From the NCBI GenBank assembly GCA_021613535.1, contig CP075494.1, positions 6,448,001-6,512,000 of the forward strand: DNA of 64,000 nt, in the 5' to 3' direction. Below, piece by piece: positions 50,377-61,886 of the stretch. This DNA is from Adineta vaga (taxonomy: Eukaryota > Animalia > Rotifera). A program made the position numbers and the translations under genes. The notes below the pieces were generated by a model, which was not told the DNA's origin, made no database searches, and saw only the letters and a program-made list of their open reading frames with translations. Numbering within the stretch: position 1 is the first letter of the stretch; every line of letters begins with the position of its first letter.

Positions 50377-53399
<3,023 letters not shown>

Positions 53400-53712
53400 T
53401 TTTATCTAAAACAGATGAATTTGATGGTTGTGTTTTGTGTTGATGATTATATTATATATGTCCTTGAACAATGACGAAATCTAGATATTTATTTCGAAAG
53501 AAACCATTCTATATGTATGTTGATGTTTTCAATGAGGGGCATGTTTTTTTTATTACACTAAAAATTTTAAAGACAATTTTTTATGAATTAAAATAAAAAT
53601 AATTACGAAAAAAGAAAATCTGGATTTATTTTAGGGAAATTCTGTTATGGGTGGCGCCACATGATTATGATTAGTGGCGCTAGATGAGTGTGATTGTCCT
53701 TTTATTTCACAA
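53400..53712. promoter_or_regulatory. Candidate bidirectional promoter DDX5/ZFAND2B
   Basis: Divergent ATGs 313 nt apart; GTGGCGCCACATG (53651-53663) and GTGGCGCTAGATG (53674-53686). Confidence 0.6.
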
Positions 53713-54542
53713 ATGGAATTCCCTCAAGTAGGTCAACATTGTTCAGCTAAAACATGTAATAAATTAGGTAAGTTATTTTCGAATATTTCAACAAAATTCT
53801 TTGTTTATTTTCTCTAGATTTTCTCCCAATGAAATGTGATTTATGTAATTCTATTTTTTGGTAAAATTTTTCGTTTTTCCAACTTTTTTACACTGAATAT
53901 GTTTTGTTGTTCTCAGTAAAGATCATATAAAATATAATGAACATCAATGTCCATCATCTTATCGTAAAAATATTCAAATTCCAATCTGTCCATTATGTAA
54001 TCAACATGTTCCCTATGAATATCGTGATCAATCACCTGATCGTGCTGTTTCTGGACATATAGATCGTGATTGTCAATCACGTAAACGTGACAAAGTCTAT
54101 TCAAATAAATGCTCAGTTTCATCATGTAAACAACGTGAAGCTATTCAAGTGAATTGTGAAAAATGTTCTAAAACTTACTGTTTACGCCATCGATTTCCTG
54201 ATGATCATAAATGTCAAGGATTACAGAAAGTATCCTCATCTGCGAAACAGAAGTAAATATCCGAAAATTTTCTATCGAAAAAACTTATGATCTATTGTTT
54301 AGAACACAAGAAGAAGATGATTATTTATTTGCAAAAGCGTTACAAGAAAGTGAACGAGAAGAATTACAAAGAACACGTCGAAATGTAAGATGAGAACTAT
54401 TTATTTATAAATTTTCTCAGAGTGAATTGTAGGGAATTTTTGTTAATTTTAACTTTTGTTTTAGCAAACCACAGCAGCAACAACAACAGCGAATAATAAT
54501 AGTGCTTCATCAACTGATAATAAAAGTTGTTCTATTCAGTAA
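53713..54542 (+). CDS. ZFAND2B: AN1-type zinc finger protein 2B (AIRAPL/aip-1-like)
   Basis: MEFPQVGQHC..DFLPMKCD..FCKDH, PICPLC, second AN1 finger YCLRHRFPDDHKC, UIM-like EEDDYLFAKALQES, CaaX end CSIQ*. Confidence 0.92.
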
Positions 54543-54655
54543 CAATAATACTTCTTTTTGTTGTACATAAAAAACTGGATTAAAAATTTGCTTTACATGG
54601 CTTCTTTATGAATTTATAGCTATATATCATTTATTGATAATTTTTAGATAAAATT

Positions 54656-55281
54656 ATGGATTTTGGTGAACCATCACCAGATGTTATTGCACGATTATAC
54701 AAAGAAATTAAAGAAAAAAAGGTTCGAATAGAACAAAAAGTAAATTAACGATCTAAAAAAATTGATATGTTTAGATTCTCGAGCTTGATTGGAAAAATCC
54801 AGGAAAGAAAAATCGAACGAAGAGACAGAAAGTTGAACAAAATCTCAGTCCAATGAAATCAGATGAATCGACAAACTCAAAAACAGATGATAATAAGTAT
54901 GTATGATAAAATTACTGATTTTACTTATTTGTCATTCTCTTTTCGAATAGATTAGTAAATGAAATTGATGAATTTGATAATGATGATGCTCTCAGATCGA
55001 ATCATATTACTGTCTCATCATTTCGCTCTGCTGGTTTGATTTTCTACTTTTTTTTTCATATTATATATTCGAAATATTCTATTTTTGTTGTATAGTTGGT
55101 AAACCCAAAACGAACGAAAAACGTCTTATTGATATGAATACAGTCATTGCAAATATTGAACGCCAACAACAAGAAGATGAACGACTTCGGTAACACTTTA
55201 ATTTTTCTTTTATTTAAAAAAACAAACAAATTTATTCTTTTTAGACAAGGCATGGACACGTCATCGGATGATAAGGCTTAA
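54656..55281 (+). CDS. PAGR1: PAXIP1-associated glutamate-rich protein 1 (PA1)-like
   Basis: Manual splice MDFGEPSPDVIARLYKEIKEKKILELDWKNPGK..DEFDNDD..MNTVIANIERQ resembles the PA1 conserved blocks (PxPxxIxxLY..LEL; EFDFDD; C-terminal helix). Not in the ORF track. Confidence 0.7.
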
Positions 55282-55364
55282 ATATTTCAAATATGTTATG
55301 TATAAATTGTACATGATTTGTGTTCTTTTGTCTTTTTCAAATATCTAAAATAAAATTTTCACAA

Positions 55365-56414
55365 TTAGGATTCTTTCAACCATTTATGAATCGAAGCAAG
55401 TTGTTTTAATTCCATCATATTGACTTGATAGTCATCCGAAATCGTCTCATATTCCCAGAGTATAGCGGCAGATGTTCGTCCATGTGCACAAATGAACGGC
55501 ATTGAACAAGATTTTAATTCATTGAGAAGATGATTACATTCATTTTTCGATAAAATATCATTAAATTTAATGGCATTGTGACAAGCTAAAGATTTGAGAG
55601 TATCGTACATGAGTAATTTAGATTGATTGATTGTTTGGAGGAGAATCTTTGTAATTGTATCGTAGATAATATTATCGAGAAGAGAAGTTGTTGATTGACG
55701 TTGTCCGAGCGTGAGAAGCCAACCGGGTACAGCTCGAACGAGAAGATTATGAGTTGAAATGGAAGAAAAAATGAAACCAGTACGTTCGAGTAGAGAGATT
55801 TGTTCGGATGTATAGAGAAATCGTGGATTCCGAGGAATAGTGGCTGGTTCAGAGAGATGAAATGGAATTGTGTGAGTGTTTTCTTGTTGAAAATGTGTTT
55901 GAAGTCGTTCGAGAAGAATACGTTCGGAAATAGCATGTTGATCAAATAGAATCAGTTGAATCTGATTGTGATGAATTAAATATTTAGTAATTAAGAATTT
56001 CTTATCGAATTGACCAACGAAACAAGTCTGATGAAGAATTTCCATATTCATCAATTTTTGAGAAGTAATTTGTCGAAGATTGCATATTGATGGATAGATT
56101 CGTGGAGGTAAAGTATTTTGAACAGTTGGAGAATGAATATCAGATGATTGTTGTAAAGTTTTTTCTGTTATCTGAAATGTTTGACGAATATTTGTCGATA
56201 GACGAACTGGATATTGACTTGCATAATGTCGATATTTCGACCATTCACGTCGTTGCGATTGAAGAAGTGTCTGTTTATAAGATTTAGTACGAGTATGTTC
56301 AAGAGTTAATCGTTGTCGTTTATGATATAATGTTTCTTGTTGTTCATTAACTTTATTAAATGTCATCCGAGCTGCACGATATCGTTCAAGAATCGTATCC
56401 TTATCCGTTGACAT
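55365..56414 (-). CDS. MLH3: MLH3-like MutL C-terminal endonuclease domain lacking the N-terminal ATPase; intronless
   Basis: GQFDKKFLI, DQHAISERILLE, ACHNAIKFND, PFICAHGRTS; 349 aa only. Confidence 0.8.
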   Translation of the reverse strand: MSTDKDTILERYRAARMTFNKVNEQQETLYHKRQRLTLEHTRTKSYKQTLLQSQRREWSKYRHYASQYPVRLSTNIRQTFQITEKTLQQSSDIHSPTVQNTLPPRIYPSICNLRQITSQKLMNMEILHQTCFVGQFDKKFLITKYLIHHNQIQLILFDQHAISERILLERLQTHFQQENTHTIPFHLSEPATIPRNPRFLYTSEQISLLERTGFIFSSISTHNLLVRAVPGWLLTLGQRQSTTSLLDNIIYDTITKILLQTINQSKLLMYDTLKSLACHNAIKFNDILSKNECNHLLNELKSCSMPFICAHGRTSAAILWEYETISDDYQVNMMELKQLASIHKWLKES

Positions 56415-56773
56415 TCTATGTTCTTAATGAATTCAAATATTTCTTGTATTCAACCTCCATGAACGTTAAACAAAAGAACGAATAATAGCGATCCCTTGCA
56501 CATATACATAAGTATAAAAATGAGCCTATTGGATTTGTAAACTCTGAATATAACTATTTTATTCATCATCATCTTTTTAATATCAAAACAAACGCACACT
56601 CAGATGAGTCAATTGAGATTACTTGTCAATATAAAACAAATCTAAGAATATAAAAAAAAGCGAGTTCACCATTGAACAAAAAAAAGCAAACTATAAAATA
56701 GAAAAGATGCTGAAAGTCGGAAGAGAAATCAACTAAAATCGATCTGTTCTTGTTAGACAAGAAAAATAGAGAT

Positions 56774-59700
56774 TTATGTATGTCGAAACAGTCCCAGATC
56801 GCGATCAGCTGCTTGAATTTCATCAAGTTTTTTACTGAATATTTTTAGAAGTTTTCCAGCAAATTCTTCTTGTGAAACGAGTAATTTTGAAACTTTCTGA
56901 CGAATTTTATCGGTTCTATCAGTAGGATCATCTTTTGCATGTGCCTTCAAAAAGAAAACTTGGAAGAAAGTGTTATGTAAGTAAATATCTTACATGAAAA
57001 CTGTCTTCTGTTGTCGACATAATATCATCCAGATCATCTTGTGTGAGATTTAAAATTTTACTTGCAGTATGCAAAGCTGTATCATAACCCGGTAATGTTA
57101 ATGATAAAGATTCACGATGTTTTTGATGTTCACGTGCTCGCTTAAGAGAATCTTTCATTTCTGAACTTCGTCGAATCATTTCATGAAGTAAACCCTAAAT
57201 AATCGATGAACAAAGAAAAAAAAGTAAAGAATTGAAAGATTTTCTTTTCTATTACAATGGTAAATCGTTCATGTTCATTTAAAGTTTTGCGTGTTCGATC
57301 TAATTCAAGAGATAATCTATTGAATGTATCTTGATTCTTTGTATTTAATGTAATCATTTGTTGTTCAGATAGACGACGAGATGTAAGAAGTTCTTGATTT
57401 AAATGTTCATGATTAAGACGATATTGTCGAAGTTGTTGTTCGTTTAGACGATATTTTGTTTGAAAATCATCATATTTACTTTTCTATTTAGATGAAAATT
57501 CGAAAAAGATTCAAAGTAAAATGAACTAAAACTTTAATTACGAGTTTTTGATGTTCATCAAGAAGTTGTGCATAACGTGTCTCTGACAATTGCTTGTCAC
57601 GTGAAATAGCTTGTAGACGATTTTTGTATGAATCAAGCTGAAATAATAATTATTGAAAAAGCAACTGAAAGAAAATTGAATACTTACTGATACTTTTAAT
57701 TTCTCCATGGTTTCTGTTAATGATTTAACACGTTCTTCATCATTCTATTTAAATAAATAAATTTCGAATAGAATCACTGAAATTTCTTAGAAAAATACTT
57801 CATGTGGAACTTTTTCTTGTGCACGACTTGTAACTGTTTCCAAATCTGACAATCGAGTTTTATAATTTTCAATTAATGTTCGTTTGCTGACGATATCACG
57901 TTCTGTATGTGTCAATCTAATGATAAGAAAGAAAATTTCAAGCAATTGAAAAATCTTCTTCGACTTACTTTTCAGTTAATGATTGAAGATTTTTCGTTAA
58001 TGTTTCATTATCGTCCTGTAAAGTTTTATTTAATTTTCGTTGTCGTGCAGCATCGAATGATGTATTTTTTAAACGTGTATATAAATTATCAATACTTTCA
58101 CTATTATCCGATGTAGTTGAATCAAGACGTCGATGTTCACAAGTAGATAATGTTGGTTGAAAAATTTGATCATTCTTCAATCGACCACAATCAGTTGTTA
58201 ATCGCTATAAAAGAATTACATGATTAATATGACAATGAAAATTTCATACTTGATTAGTATTTTTGAGAATATTAACGCGATTATTTGCTGTTAATAAACG
58301 TTGTTGAAGTTGATGATTGTCTTCTTTTGCATCGAGTAAATCCATCTGTAATTGTTCCATACGTTTACGCATGGTTGCTAGCTAAAATAAAACGTACATT
58401 CCGTGAGCAAATTCGAAAATATTCTACATACTCGAGTCGAAGGTTTTTGTGTCGTAGATTTTCTTGCATACTGTGCATAGGGATCTCGATGAAATGAATT
58501 CGATAGACGAACTTTATTATTAACGTTTTTCTTCATTGGAATGTCTAAAATTTAAATGAAAAATGAAAGAAAAATTTAGTATTGAATGACTAACATGTCT
58601 TCTTTGATATCGATGGTCGTTTTTTTCGTTTCATTAATGAAGATTGTGTATGATAATCACAAAGACTACATGTATGACATCGTTGTTGTTGTTGTTGTTG
58701 TCGCCGACGATTTGTATTCACAGATTCAGTCTTTACTGATGATACTCGATAGAGATTTGTTGATTGTTCTGAAAGATCAATTGGAATTCGTGGACTTGGA
58801 TTTTGATCTAATAACATTTCTAAACAAGATTTATTTCCTTTCTTTTTTATTATTCGTTTCTTCTTTGTAAATGATGGTGGTGTAGGGAGAGTCTTTTTCG
58901 TTTTTATTTGAGTATTTCGTTTGAATTTATGAACTTGATCTTGTAATGCAAGTATTCGAAATTTTAATTTTTTCATTTCAGTTGTTGTTTGTGTTCGTTG
59001 TTGAAGTAAATGTTGTTTTTCATCAATACAAAGGTCTAAATTGGTTTTTAAACGTTCTTGTTCAAAAATTAAACATGTTCGTTCAGTTTCAAGATCATAT
59101 AGTTTTTTATCAAGTTCTTCAATTAATCGTTGTTGATCATCATTAGATGGAAGCACTGTTGGCGAGGAAGTCTTCATACGAAGATGATCATCTTTATCAT
59201 TCAATAATTGAATTTCATTTCGAAGTTCACCGATGACGATTGTTTGTTCATTGATTTCAATTTCTTGTAAATCAATTTTTTCTTGTAAACTAACACTAAA
59301 ATAAAAATTCAAACGGATCAATAATGAAAAAGAATTCTCATCAACCATCCATCGTACTTTTCATTTACTAATCGAGCATTTTCTCGTCGTAGTTTGGTTA
59401 CTTCATTCCAAACACTATCATCATCTTCTTGTTTAAGTAATTTACGATTTGATCCTGTTTGTCGTCGTCGACGTTGATCATTACATATTGAACAACCAAC
59501 TTTATTCTTTCGAATTGCTCTTCCATAGAAATAATCATTATTCGAATTCTTTTGTAATGTTTCATCATCTGTATAAGATTGTAATTCTTCTTTAACAGAT
59601 CGATATTGTTTTTGTAAATGTTTCAAACGTAACCAACGTTTATCATGAACTTTTTTTAATGTAGCAATTTGATCGTCACGTTTAACAAGTAATTGTTGAA

Positions 59701-61886
59701 CATTAGTTAAACGATCAGTTAAAGTATGAATTTTCTTTTTCAAATATTCAATATCTAGTGGAGATGATGTAGGAGATTGATCACGAACTGGAGGAGATGA
59801 ACGACGTTTCTTTTGAGATGAAGATCGAGTTGATCTAATATGATAATGTAGTTATGATTCTATAATTAGAAAAGAACTTACTTTCCAGTAGATAAATTTC
59901 GTCCAGGATTGTCACTACAAGCTCGACAATGACCAACGTGAGATAAATGACCCTTGCAGAAAGATATATATATATATGTATATATATATATGATCAATGA
60001 CATGATGAAAATGAAAACTTACTGGTACTGATGTATCACGAGAACGACGGAGAGTTAGTTTTAAATTCTCAATTTCATTATCACGATCTTTTAATGTCTG
60101 AAAAGTGCATCAAAATAAGTTTTTATTCGTGTGAACGTTTTGATCCACCGTTCTATCCTTAGGAGATGATGAAAAAATCGATTTTGAAATATATCTAAAC
60201 CTAAGTGATATACAAAACCACTCTCTTTTCAAGTATTCGTTAAAATAAATTTGATATCACGTCTATATGACCGATTGTATATAACTTTTACTTCAATCGA
60301 TGTTAGGGCAAGCACTTATACTAACAATGAAGTATTTACACTGTAGTACTTCGACTTTCTTCAAAGAAGTCTATATCCATTAGTTACATTTTATTTGTCT
60401 TGTTGAGAGTTATAAAAACAAATATAGAGCATTGTTTCATTTCAATTGTCTTTAATACAAATTCATGACTTTAAATCATCATCGTATACAGATTTTTTGA
60501 TGGAATAATGAATGTTTAGGTAGGCTATTCTCAAGGTTGATTGGTCACGAATTGTACTGAGAAGAAAAGAAGAAGAAAGATTAATTTGACTAGTGAATGC
60601 CTGCTAGACGTTTCTTTTAAAAGAGCATATCATTGAAAAAATGCCGTAGGACTCCATCATCTTATATCACATCTACATTTGACGACACGATAGTGATTCT
60701 CAACAAATGACTATTTAAAAATCTACTGTCTTTATATGGTTTGTTTGTTAAATAGTTCATACTCATAATTAAACCTTTGCATGAGAATAAAAATATAATT
60801 GGAGCATTGTTCGATCGGCTTAAGAAACAAATCATCTCGTGCACGCAATAGAAACTTGCGTAACTTCTTTTACTTACATTTTGAAGTGAAGCGATATGTG
60901 CTTTCAATGAATCATCCTCGAAATTACCATCTATATATGAATAGACCAATCTGTTTTTTCTTGATCAATCAAATGAAAAAGTTACTTGTCTGTTTCTTCT
61001 TTTGTAAATCAATTATTTCTCTTCTAATCGATGAAGAAAATATATTTTATTCAAATAAAGTTTTCTTTCATTCGAATTTATATACCTTAATTTGCCAATT
61101 GTATCTTCACGATCTTCAACTGCTGCTTTATAAGAATCAAGTTTTTCTCGCCATAATTGTGTATCTGCAGCGATACGGTCAAATGTCTATGAATTTTGAG
61201 ATACTATCAACATCAATACTTTCAATATTAAATAAAACTATACCATAATTTTTTCATGATTAACTGCTTCGAAATCAGATCTTTCTCGTAGTTGTTTTGT
61301 TAGATCATTGGCATGTTCGAATAAACCTACTCAATAATCATAAATTGGGAAAATAGGATTGGAAAAAATCCTTACGTTCATTTTCACTTTGACAATCACG
61401 TATCGTCTTTTCAAATGTTTGTACTTGTAATTGATGTAACTGTTCAAACGTTCTTGTCTAAAATAGTTTTGAATATTTTTAAAACAAAAAGATTGTAAAT
61501 GATTCTAAAGCAAACCTTGTCTTCATACTGTCTTAACTGTTCTTCAAGTGCACGAAATTCTGTATTTCTTTTCTTCAATAAATCTTCTAACACTTGTTCA
61601 CTAAATATCGAACCAATGAAAAGAAGATTTGTAGTCTCATAGAGTAACTTACCGATCTTCTAATTTAGCAATCGAAGCATTTTTTTCTTGAATAACTCGT
61701 TCAAGTTTTTCTATGAGTTGTTCACGATTTTTTGATCGAAGTTCCTCACTATTTAATAGTACAAATTGATGTTCACTTGTGAACCTACAAAAGAAAACGA
61801 TGTACAATGCGAAAAATTCGAAAGATTCTTTACGTTGGTTCTGTGAAAGCACTTGTTGGCGCTTGAAGACCATTCACAGTTGCCAT
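56774..61886 (-). CDS. CNTLN: Centlein-like centrosomal coiled-coil protein, many exons
   Basis: Long coiled coil; HDKRWLRLKHLQKQYRSVKEEL and QEDDDSVWNEVTKLRRENARL resemble centlein conserved blocks (from recall); C-terminal ASKILNLTQDDLDDIM; start MATVNGLQ. Confidence 0.75.

What the first reader, a model, noticed from the sequence alone, without database searches (positions are those of the whole stretch)
55365..56414. Stand-alone MLH3-type endonuclease domain with no GHKL ATPase
Seen: an intronless 349-aa ORF with DQHAxxERxxxE, ACH and CAHGR metal-binding motifs (MLH3-type ACHxAIKFND; the Pro after HGR is Thr). It is preceded only by ~120 basic/helical residues. The upstream same-strand gene stops 359 nt away, leaving no room for an ATPase domain. 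Established: MutL proteins normally couple an N-terminal ATPase to this domain, and MLH1-MLH3 resolves meiotic crossovers. Inference: a split, truncated or repurposed MutL-gamma subunit, relevant to the atypical meiosis and DNA-break repair of bdelloids if the taxon guess holds.
Basis: partly seen in the sequence, partly recalled or inferred. Interest (0 to 1): 0.8.

Follow-up and report, generated by a model that had tools for sequence, protein, structure and literature searches.

The report
Bdelloid MLH3 cutting domain without ATPase
Bdelloid rotifers, reported to have lost the meiotic crossover gene MLH3, keep and transcribe a short one-exon gene for its DNA-cutting half only, without the usual ATP-driven half, so a crossover nuclease may still work in these asexual animals in an unusual form.

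Summary
Window 55365-56414 (minus strand) is an intact 349-aa ORF with a MutL C-terminal endonuclease domain. All metal-binding motifs are present.

It is a gene of its own. RNA contigs from four studies cover it and stop 4 nt or less upstream of the ATG, with no splice to upstream exons. No MutL ATPase exon lies in the 64-kb window. In the whole 101-Mb genome the only MutL ATPases belong to MLH1 and a PMS-type gene.

About 30 single-exon relatives of 281-445 aa (most 341-371 aa) occur in Adineta, Rotaria and Didymodactylos. Neighbouring genes are the same in Adineta and Rotaria. Codon omega is 0.16 (0.115 in the domain).

It matches MLH3 better than bacterial MutL or PMS: yeast Mlh3 scores 1e-27 against 3e-19 and 6e-14, and MLH3 profiles score about 30 bits higher. 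The tree places it outside the bacterial-type clade but not inside animal MLH3.

"Truncated" is supported and "split" is rejected. The genome's MLH1 still ends in FERC, so the likely role is an MLH1-paired nuclease with a single ATPase; this is inferred, not tested.

The one published bdelloid inventory found (2018) lists MLH3 as absent. Hydra vulgaris has a similar intronless 433-aa Mlh3, so the layout is not unique to bdelloids. Verdict: new variant of a known kind, interest about 0.6.

The parts
55365..56414 (-). Single-exon CDS of 349 aa plus stop: an MLH3-derived protein with the C-terminal domain only
   Evidence: ORF. Pfam MutL_C 1.3e-14. Colinear RNA contigs in 4 runs. Single copy in the genome.
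56223..56414 (-). Residues 1-64: basic region (net +8) predicted as two helices. It is specific to the bdelloid lineage and conserved among bdelloids.
   Evidence: AlphaFold2 helices 5-26 and 29-64, pLDDT 62-90. Charge count. Alignment consensus LLERYxAAR...QETLYHKRQR. Omega for the N-terminal part is 0.27.
56058..56222 (-). Residues 65-119: low-confidence linker containing the conserved LPPRIYP motif
   Evidence: pLDDT 47-62. Conserved motif in alignment A1. Moth MLH3 alignments start at about residue 85.
55425..56057 (-). Residues 120-330: MutL C-terminal dimerisation/endonuclease domain
   Evidence: pLDDT mostly 74-98 per 10-residue block. Foldseek top hit is yeast Mlh3 chain 6shx_B at 1e-12. 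Profile against PDB: Mlh3 1e-27.
55908..55943 (-). DQHAISERILLE, the DQHA(X)2E(X)4E endonuclease motif
   Evidence: Read from the sequence. D158, Q159, H160, A161, E164 and R165 are invariant in 118 sequences.
55557..55586 (-). ACHNAIKFND, the ACR/ACH metal-ligand motif
   Evidence: Read from the sequence. C278 is invariant.
55473..55490 (-). CAHGRT, the C(A/P)HGR(P) metal-ligand motif. Ala after Cys is the MLH3 type. Thr replaces the usual Pro.
   Evidence: Read from the sequence. C309, H311, G312 and R313 are invariant. Motif survey: CAHGR in proteins named Mlh3, CPHGR in the bacterial-type sequences and in this genome's PMS-type gene.
55368..55424 (-). Residues 331-349: C-terminal helix (..MELKQLASIHKWLKES), highly conserved in bdelloids
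   Evidence: AlphaFold2 helix 333-348. Alignment. BLAST alignment with moth MLH3 runs into this tail, but a tail-only HMM finds no relative.
56415..56533 (.). Intergenic gap, presumed promoter and 5' end. It contains the in-frame TAA and the CATAG just before the ATG.
   Evidence: No RNA contig covers 56419-56533 in any of 4 runs. The ORF contigs end at 56375-56418, and the upstream gene's contigs begin at 56534-56659.
56534..56776 (-). Stop codon and 3' UTR of the upstream, separate coiled-coil gene (multi-exon, about 1100 aa in relatives)
   Evidence: Spliced contigs with CT..AC joints from 56943 upward. ORFs. Called as a separate 1085-1105-aa gene in A. ricciae and A. steineri.

Best explanation
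This is a real, transcribed, single-exon bdelloid gene. It encodes an N-terminally truncated descendant of MLH3: the complete C-terminal dimerisation/endonuclease domain, preceded by a lineage-specific basic helical segment and a short linker. It has no GHKL ATPase or transducer domain anywhere in the gene or the genome.

Shown here:
- The gene structure, its independence from the upstream gene, and its transcription.
- Conservation across bdelloid rotifers, and purifying selection.
- An intact set of metal ligands, and MLH3-type sequence and fold.
- An MLH1 gene in the same genome that keeps the FERC C-terminus.

Inferred mechanism:
- The domain pairs with the MLH1 C-terminal domain, as Mlh3 does in MutL-gamma.
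- The MLH1 C-terminus completes the metal site.
- The resulting complex has one ATPase (that of MLH1) instead of two, and nicks DNA during recombination. That would mean crossover or joint-molecule resolution together with MSH4-MSH5 and EXO1, which a 2018 inventory reports as present in bdelloids.
- The N-terminal helices may supply self-association or a partner or DNA contact in place of the lost ATPase domain.

The intronless state, among genes with many short introns, suggests origin from a 5'-truncated retrocopy or from an internal-promoter isoform. This was not tested.
For: Gene and domain:
- ORF and motifs.
- Profile against PDB: yeast Mlh3 1e-27, B. subtilis MutL 3e-19, yeast Pms1 6e-14.
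- AlphaFold2 mean pLDDT 80.7, mostly 74-98 across the domain. Foldseek's top three hits are Mlh3 chains of Mlh1-Mlh3 crystal structures.

Independent transcript:
- RNA contigs from 4 studies cover 55244-56418 with no joint inside or upstream. A gap at 56419-56533 separates them from the upstream gene's 3' end.

No ATPase:
- DNA_mis_repair matches only C2:1543839 (MLH1) and C1:4882935 (PMS).
- The other HATPase_c_3 hits are HSP90/GRP94, MORC and sacsin-like genes.
- MLH3 N-terminal queries hit only the MLH1 and PMS loci.
- phmmer against six-frame translations finds nothing in the window or the relatives' flanks, while positive controls hit.

Conservation:
- About 30 relatives of 281-445 aa (most 341-371 aa) carry MutL_C only.
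- They are single exons, with conserved gene order in Adineta and Rotaria. In Didymodactylos the upstream neighbour is on the opposite strand.
- The codon model (GY+F3X4) gives omega 0.16 overall, 0.115 in the domain and 0.27 in the N-terminal part. Pairwise values are 0.16-0.55.

MLH3 affinity:
- The nearest non-bdelloid proteins are eukaryotic MLH3.
- MLH3 profiles beat bacterial-type profiles by 15-44 bits in 45 of 45 tests.
- All 30 ESM Atlas hits carry MutL_C; the three clusters shown are 100% eukaryotic.

Partner:
- This genome's MLH1 ends ...LYKVFERC.
Against: - No experiment or model here shows binding to MLH1 or nuclease activity.
- From my own knowledge of the literature, not checked here: in yeast the Mlh3 ATP-binding site matters for both mismatch repair and crossing over. 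Function without it needs some compensation.
- The tree does not place bdelloids inside animal MLH3. They form a long branch (0.75) in a basal polytomy. With 51 rows the three groups form a star.
- The Pro after HGR is Thr.
- Pairwise dN/dS reaches 0.5-0.6 between close Rotaria species.
- The RNA evidence comes from unstranded contigs. These cannot show the strand or the true 5' end, and they drop rare isoforms. In one run the convergent downstream gene's contig overlaps the ORF's 3' part.
Confidence: 0.7

Rival explanations
1. It binds MLH1 but acts as a regulator or competitor, for example by titrating MLH1 away from the PMS partner or acting as a scaffold. It would not be an active crossover nuclease.
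For: It lacks the ATPase that canonical MutL complexes use to license cutting. The N-terminal part is under relaxed selection (omega 0.27; pairwise values up to about 1). Pro is replaced by Thr after HGR.
Against: Every metal-ligand residue and the DQHA..E....E motif are invariant across bdelloids and across 118 MutL domains. A pure binding role would not require this. Domain omega is 0.115.
Confidence: 0.12
2. It works without MLH1, as a homodimeric nuclease like a bacterial MutL C-terminal domain. The N-terminal helices would mediate self-association or DNA binding in break repair after desiccation.
For: The fold superposes best in TM-score on B. subtilis MutL domain homodimers (TM by target 0.66-0.71, against 0.50-0.53 for Mlh3). 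The N-terminus is basic and helical.
Against: Sequence profiles favour MLH3 by 8 orders of magnitude and by about 30 bits. From knowledge of the solved MutL-alpha and MutL-gamma structures: eukaryotic MLH3 and PMS domains need the MLH1 C-terminus in the active site. This genome's MLH1 keeps FERC.
Confidence: 0.1
3. It is a bacterial MutL C-terminal domain acquired by horizontal transfer. Bdelloids carry many foreign genes, and this one has no intron.
For: It is intronless among intron-rich neighbours. B. subtilis MutL aligns over the whole domain at 1.4e-10. The unrooted tree cannot say which side of the bacterial/MLH3 split bdelloids attach to.
Against: - The bacterial-type CPHGR clade excludes bdelloids with 99% support.
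- The motif is CAHGR, as in proteins named Mlh3.
- MLH3 profiles win in 45 of 45 tests.
- The top hits are eukaryotic MLH3.
- The tail after the HGR motif is 34 aa, as in MLH3 (about 25-45), not the 15-17 seen in bacterial-type sequences.
Confidence: 0.04
4. The gene model is incomplete. Unrecognised upstream exons, or a separately encoded half, supply the ATPase.
For: An AG lies 1 nt before the ATG. Contigs cannot exclude rare isoforms.
Against: - An in-frame stop lies 3 codons upstream.
- No joints appear in 4 studies, and one contig reads through the AG.
- No ATPase-like ORF is found in the window, in the flanks of four relatives, or as a third locus in the genome.
- In Didymodactylos the upstream gene is on the other strand.
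Confidence: 0.03
5. It is a decaying remnant of MLH3 with no function.
For: Published inventories call MLH3 absent (PMC6264785). Some pairwise dN/dS values are fairly high.
Against: The ORF is intact in at least 7 species with synonymous divergence of 1 or more. Omega is 0.16. The catalytic residues are invariant. It is transcribed in 4 studies.
Confidence: 0.01

Closest known systems
MLH3, the endonuclease subunit of MutL-gamma (MLH1-MLH3); solved yeast C-terminal domains 6rmn, 6shx, 6sns
   Same: - The C-terminal domain fold.
- The motifs DQHA(X)2E(X)4E, AC(R/H) and CAHGR.
- It is the best sequence and structure match.
- A partner MLH1 with a FERC terminus is present in the genome.
   Different: - No GHKL ATPase, no transducer domain and no long linker.
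- 349 aa instead of about 700-1700 aa.
- A new basic helical N-terminus.
- Thr instead of Pro after HGR.
- A single exon.
Hydra vulgaris 'DNA mismatch repair protein Mlh3' (RefSeq, 433 aa; P0214) and five further hydrozoan-like cluster representatives of 433-485 aa
   Same: It has the C-terminal domain only, with MutL_C as the sole Pfam hit. It is intronless and sits tightly between unrelated genes, with no ATPase ORF within 10 kb on either side.
   Different: It has a different, low-complexity N-terminal part of about 190 aa and keeps CAHGRPS. It sits apart from bdelloids in the tree, within a set of non-bacterial (CAHGR) sequences that includes Ciona and arthropod MLH3, so the truncation was probably independent. 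Whether Hydra has a full-length MLH3 elsewhere was not tested.
Bacterial MutL C-terminal endonuclease domain (B. subtilis 3gab/3kdk, N. gonorrhoeae 3ncv, Aquifex 5b42)
   Same: The same fold and metal ligands. From knowledge of the literature: isolated domains of these proteins are known to nick DNA weakly with Mn2+. This shows that a domain on its own can be catalytic.
   Different: The bacterial proteins carry CPHGRP and a short tail, form homodimers and are part of full-length ATPase proteins. Bdelloid sequences lie outside that clade (99% support) and score about 30 bits lower on its profile.
PMS2/Pms1, the endonuclease subunit of MutL-alpha
   Same: It is also an MLH1-paired endonuclease domain.
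   Different: This genome has its own PMS-type gene at C1:4882008-4884442, with an ATPase, introns, and the ACRMSIM and CPHGRPT motifs. The profile match to yeast Pms1 is 13 orders of magnitude weaker than to Mlh3.

Membership tests
MutL homologue, MLH3 subfamily (canonical) | C-terminal dimerisation/endonuclease domain (Pfam MutL_C fold) | tested here: met
   Pfam 1.3e-14. AlphaFold2 pLDDT is mostly 74-98 per 10-residue block across residues 120-330. Foldseek top hits are Mlh3, Pms1 and MutL C-terminal domains.
MutL homologue, MLH3 subfamily (canonical) | Endonuclease metal-site motifs DQHA(X)2E(X)4E, AC(R/K/H), C(A/P)HGR(P) | tested here: met
   All are present and their ligand residues are invariant. 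The one deviation is Thr for the Pro after HGR.
MutL homologue, MLH3 subfamily (canonical) | N-terminal GHKL ATPase plus transducer (HATPase_c_3 and DNA_mis_repair) | tested here: not met
   Absent from the protein, from the window and as a third locus in the genome.
MutL homologue, MLH3 subfamily (canonical) | Closer to MLH3 than to PMS or bacterial MutL by sequence | tested here: met
   Profile against PDB: Mlh3 1e-27, B. subtilis MutL 3e-19, Pms1 6e-14. MLH3 HMM minus bacterial HMM is +15 to +44 bits in 45 of 45 tests, with held-out controls at +124 and -117. CAHGR motif.
MutL homologue, MLH3 subfamily (canonical) | Nests within the MLH3 clade in a tree | tested here: inconclusive
   Bdelloids are monophyletic (96-99% support) on a long stem. 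They are excluded from the bacterial-type clade (99%) but unresolved among MLH3-type lineages. A constrained-tree test on 154 rows did not finish.
MutL homologue, MLH3 subfamily (canonical) | Heterodimer with MLH1 through the C-terminal domains, with the MLH1 C-terminus in the active site | not testable with these tools
   Only the precondition was checked: the genome's MLH1 has an Mlh1_C domain and ends in FERC. No multimer modelling was available.
MutL homologue, MLH3 subfamily (canonical) | Metal-dependent DNA nicking and a role in crossover resolution | not testable with these tools
   This needs biochemistry or genetics.
Horizontally acquired bacterial MutL fragment | Nests within bacterial MutL diversity and carries the bacterial motif type | tested here: not met
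   The CPHGR clade excludes it at 99%. The motif is CAHGR. The eukaryotic profile is preferred.

The most novel reading that the evidence does not exclude
An MLH3 without an ATPase is a working crossover nuclease. The short protein pairs with MLH1 and resolves joint molecules in the non-reductional meiosis of bdelloids. The same stripped-down design arose more than once (Hydra) and may predate bdelloid asexuality. The Brachionus mlh3 knockout paper says its frameshifts in exon 2 stop translation 'before functional motifs', and the peptide at its cut site (..PRLYAQRG) resembles the bdelloid LPPRIYP just upstream of the domain. If so, the second ATPase of MutL-gamma is dispensable for crossing over.
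Probability: 0.25. Interest if true: 0.78.

Novelty: new variant of a known kind. Interest (0 to 1): 0.6.

Why it matters
The one published bdelloid DNA-repair inventory found in the paper search (PMC6264785) scores MLH3 as absent and reads this as a recent loss. That feeds into the debate on whether these "ancient asexuals" can make crossovers.

This gene shows that the catalytic half of MLH3 was kept in every bdelloid species sampled, under selection, and is transcribed. The same paper lists MLH1, MSH4, MSH5 and EXO1 as present. The class I crossover route therefore becomes testable in bdelloids.

For the repair field, this is a natural experiment on whether a MutL complex can work with one ATPase. 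Hydra offers a second, probably independent case.

Tried and rejected
- Hidden ATPase exons: rejected by the Pfam scans, two MLH3 N-terminal queries and a six-frame phmmer search with positive controls.
- Other HATPase_c_3 loci: they are HSP90/GRP94, MORC, sacsin-like and TRAP1-like genes.
- Second copy or ohnologue: none found.
- Bacterial origin: not supported.
- Tail-only HMM, to prove MLH3 ancestry of the C-terminal helix: no hits, so that argument is dropped.
- Constrained-tree (AU) test on the 154-row tree: did not finish in three runs. The 51-row tree showed that three monophyletic groups give only one unrooted topology, so the test could not decide the question anyway.
- Monogonont (Brachionus) MLH3: not recovered by two word-index searches, which only see proteins of 192-610 aa, nor recognised in the top 150 of the full search. 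The Brachionus papers give no domain map in text.
- A phrase search for described ATPase-less MLH3 returned only irrelevant papers.
- A loose end at 55858 in two RNA runs comes from an unrelated locus at C1:10065508.

Full report
**What is there.**
- On the minus strand, 55365-56414 is a 349-codon ORF. Its open frame reaches only three codons further upstream, to a TAA.
- Pfam finds one domain, MutL_C, at residues 143-287 (1.3e-14).
- The three endonuclease motifs can be read directly: DQHAISERILLE (158-169), ACHNAIKFND (277-286) and CAHGRT (309-314).
- In an alignment of 118 MutL C-terminal domains, the ligand residues H160, E164, C278, C309 and H311 are invariant.
- AlphaFold2, run with that alignment, gives mean pLDDT 80.7. 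The domain (120-330) is modelled with confidence mostly 74-98 per 10-residue block. Residues 5-64 form two helices. Residues 65-115 have low confidence. Residues 333-348 form a terminal helix.
- Foldseek's three best PDB hits are the Mlh3 chains of yeast Mlh1-Mlh3 crystal structures (1e-12 to 4e-12).

**Is it a gene of its own?**
- All four runs laid on 55000-60900 are RNA. Their contigs skip 45-64-nt GT..AG or CT..AC introns in both neighbouring genes.
- Across the ORF the contigs are colinear with the DNA. They end at 56375, 56407, 56407 and 56418, that is, at the ATG (56414) or 4 nt beyond it.
- None has a joint into or out of the ORF.
- No contig covers 56419-56533. The upstream coiled-coil gene's contigs start at 56534-56659, downstream of its stop at 56774.
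- One contig reads through the AG that precedes the ATG, so that AG is not used as a cis acceptor in the dominant RNA. Use as a spliced-leader acceptor is possible but was not tested.
- Caveats: these are unstranded contigs, and rare isoforms are dropped. In one run the convergent downstream gene's contig (depth 22) runs to 55595 inside the ORF, while the rest of the ORF has depth 3-5. The two 3' ends therefore probably overlap.

**Is there an ATPase anywhere?**
- The genome has 100.8 Mb in six sequences, and the window is C5:6448001-6512000.
- MutL_C is found only here and at C1:4884206.
- DNA_mis_repair is found only at C2:1543839 and C1:4882935.
- HATPase_c_3 is found at those two loci and at nine further places. 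By their translations these are HSP90/GRP94, MORC (a C2/C5 pair), sacsin-like and TRAP1-like genes.
- MLH3 N-terminal domains from a butterfly and a chytrid hit only the MLH1 and PMS loci.
- A phmmer search with four MLH3 N-terminal domains was run against six-frame translations of the whole window, the flanks of four bdelloid relatives and the Hydra locus. It found nothing there, while the MLH1 locus, the PMS locus and a metagenomic MLH3 scored as positive controls.
- The protein is single copy.
- "Split" is therefore rejected. The gene is simply short.

**Conservation.**
- The word-index search found about 30 relatives of 281-445 aa (most 341-371 aa), each with MutL_C as its only domain. They come from Adineta ricciae, A. 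steineri, Rotaria sordida, R. socialis, two Rotaria sp. and Didymodactylos carnosus (45% identity), plus unnamed assemblies.
- In the six genomes fetched, the gene is a single exon.
- In Adineta and Rotaria the gene order is the same as in the window: the short MutL_C gene, then PAXIP1_C and zf-AN1 genes on the opposite strand, then a DEAD helicase. A gene of about 1100 aa with no Pfam hit lies directly upstream in A. ricciae and A. steineri, as does a coiled-coil gene in the window. No upstream gene is called within 5 kb in Rotaria sp. Silwood1.
- In Didymodactylos the upstream neighbour is on the other strand.
- A codon model on seven species gives omega 0.16 overall, 0.115 for the domain and 0.27 for the N-terminal 120 residues.
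- Pairwise NG86 values are 0.16-0.55.
- The N-terminal helices, the LPPRIYP motif and the C-terminal helix are conserved among bdelloids.

**Which MutL family?**
- A profile of the relatives matches yeast Mlh3 at 1e-27, B. subtilis MutL at 3e-19 and yeast Pms1 at 6e-14.
- The exhaustive search's best non-bdelloid hits are eukaryotic: Synchytrium, Diplonema, moth and butterfly "Mlh3-like" proteins of 900-1400 aa, an ant Mlh3 and Hydra Mlh3.
- The motif after the second cysteine is CAHGR, as in all proteins named Mlh3. The bacterial-type hits and this genome's own PMS-type gene have CPHGR.
- HMMs were built from 21 long eukaryotic MLH3 domains and from 21 bacterial-type domains. In 45 of 45 tests the bdelloid sequences scored 15-44 bits higher on the MLH3 model. 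Held-out controls scored +124 and -117.
- All 30 ESM Atlas hits carry MutL_C, and the three clusters shown are 100% eukaryotic.
- The tree is less helpful. Bdelloids are monophyletic on a long stem and lie outside the bacterial-type clade (99%). They are not resolved inside animal MLH3.
- I therefore call the protein MLH3-derived. I do not file it as a canonical MutL homologue, because the defining ATPase was tested for and is absent.

**Mechanism (inferred).**
- From knowledge of the solved MutL-alpha and MutL-gamma structures: the endonuclease site of Pms1 or Mlh3 is completed by the last residues of Mlh1.
- This genome's MLH1 has an Mlh1_C domain and ends ...LYKVFERC.
- The most economical reading is a heterodimer of MLH1 with this short protein, carrying one ATPase instead of two.
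- PMC6264785 lists MSH4, MSH5, MLH1, PMS2 and EXO1 as present in bdelloids and MLH3 as absent. The usual partners of MutL-gamma are therefore available.
- How the complex would be licensed without the Mlh3 ATPase is unknown. The conserved basic helical N-terminus is the obvious candidate for a compensating contact.
- Rivals are a non-catalytic MLH1 binder and an MLH1-independent homodimeric nuclease.

**Context and novelty.**
- The only bdelloid inventory found in the paper search says MLH3 is absent and was recently lost.
- Public databases name the relatives only "MutL C-terminal dimerisation domain-containing protein".
- The design is not unique. The Hydra vulgaris RefSeq "Mlh3" is 433 aa, has MutL_C only, is intronless and starts 27 nt after the preceding gene. 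No ATPase ORF lies within 10 kb.
- Five further cluster representatives of 433-485 aa group with Hydra at 100% support.
- In Brachionus, frameshifts in mlh3 exon 2 abolish male production and are said to stop translation "before functional motifs". This hints, but does not show, that monogononts also have a short form. I could not obtain that sequence.

**Limits.**
- No stranded or raw reads were available.
- No multimer model could be run.
- The species name is inferred. A 101-Mb, six-chromosome assembly whose protein is about 73-75% identical to that of A. ricciae fits Adineta vaga.

Noticed in passing
L018:10001-11302 (Hydra vulgaris CP147932.1): The Hydra RefSeq 'Mlh3' is a 433-aa, intronless protein with MutL_C only. 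It sits between a DUF1242 gene and an RWD gene. Five other cluster representatives of 433-485 aa group with it at 100% support. This may be an independent case of an MLH3 without an ATPase.
   Followed up: partly
window 55244-55595: In RNA run X2, the contig of the convergent downstream plus-strand gene (depth 22) runs about 230 nt into the 3' part of the ORF. The rest of the ORF has depth 3-5. In other runs one contig spans both genes. The 3' ends of the two genes probably overlap in antisense.
   Followed up: no
window about 51000-59800, and L019-L024: The gene order MutL_C gene, then PAXIP1_C and zf-AN1 on the opposite strand, then DEAD helicase is conserved between Adineta and Rotaria. A large gene (about 1100 aa, no Pfam hit) lies directly upstream in the Adineta genomes.
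   Followed up: partly
G000 C2:1542979-1545269, C1:4881972-4884442, C5:6503368-6504414: MLH1, the PMS-type gene and the short MLH3 each occur once in this assembly of a degenerate tetraploid, with no second (ohnologue) copy. This matches the published remark that mismatch-repair genes lack ohnologues in bdelloids.
   Followed up: partly
L017:5349-7019 (JGI metagenome contig): An unidentified eukaryote has an MLH3-type gene with the same CAHGRTS variant as bdelloids. It still has recognisable ATPase motifs (DNGHGI, YGYRGQ) and a very short linker. It may be a useful intermediate form.
   Followed up: partly
window 56728-59576: RNA run X12 differs from the window at 9 positions in the upstream coiled-coil gene but at none across 55244-56375 (the ORF). 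It may come from another strain, with the ORF unusually invariant.
   Followed up: no
window 55858: Contigs in runs X8 and X12 match from 55858 onward, but their other 255 letters belong to C1:10065508. This is a short shared stretch or an assembly chimera, not an isoform.
   Followed up: yes
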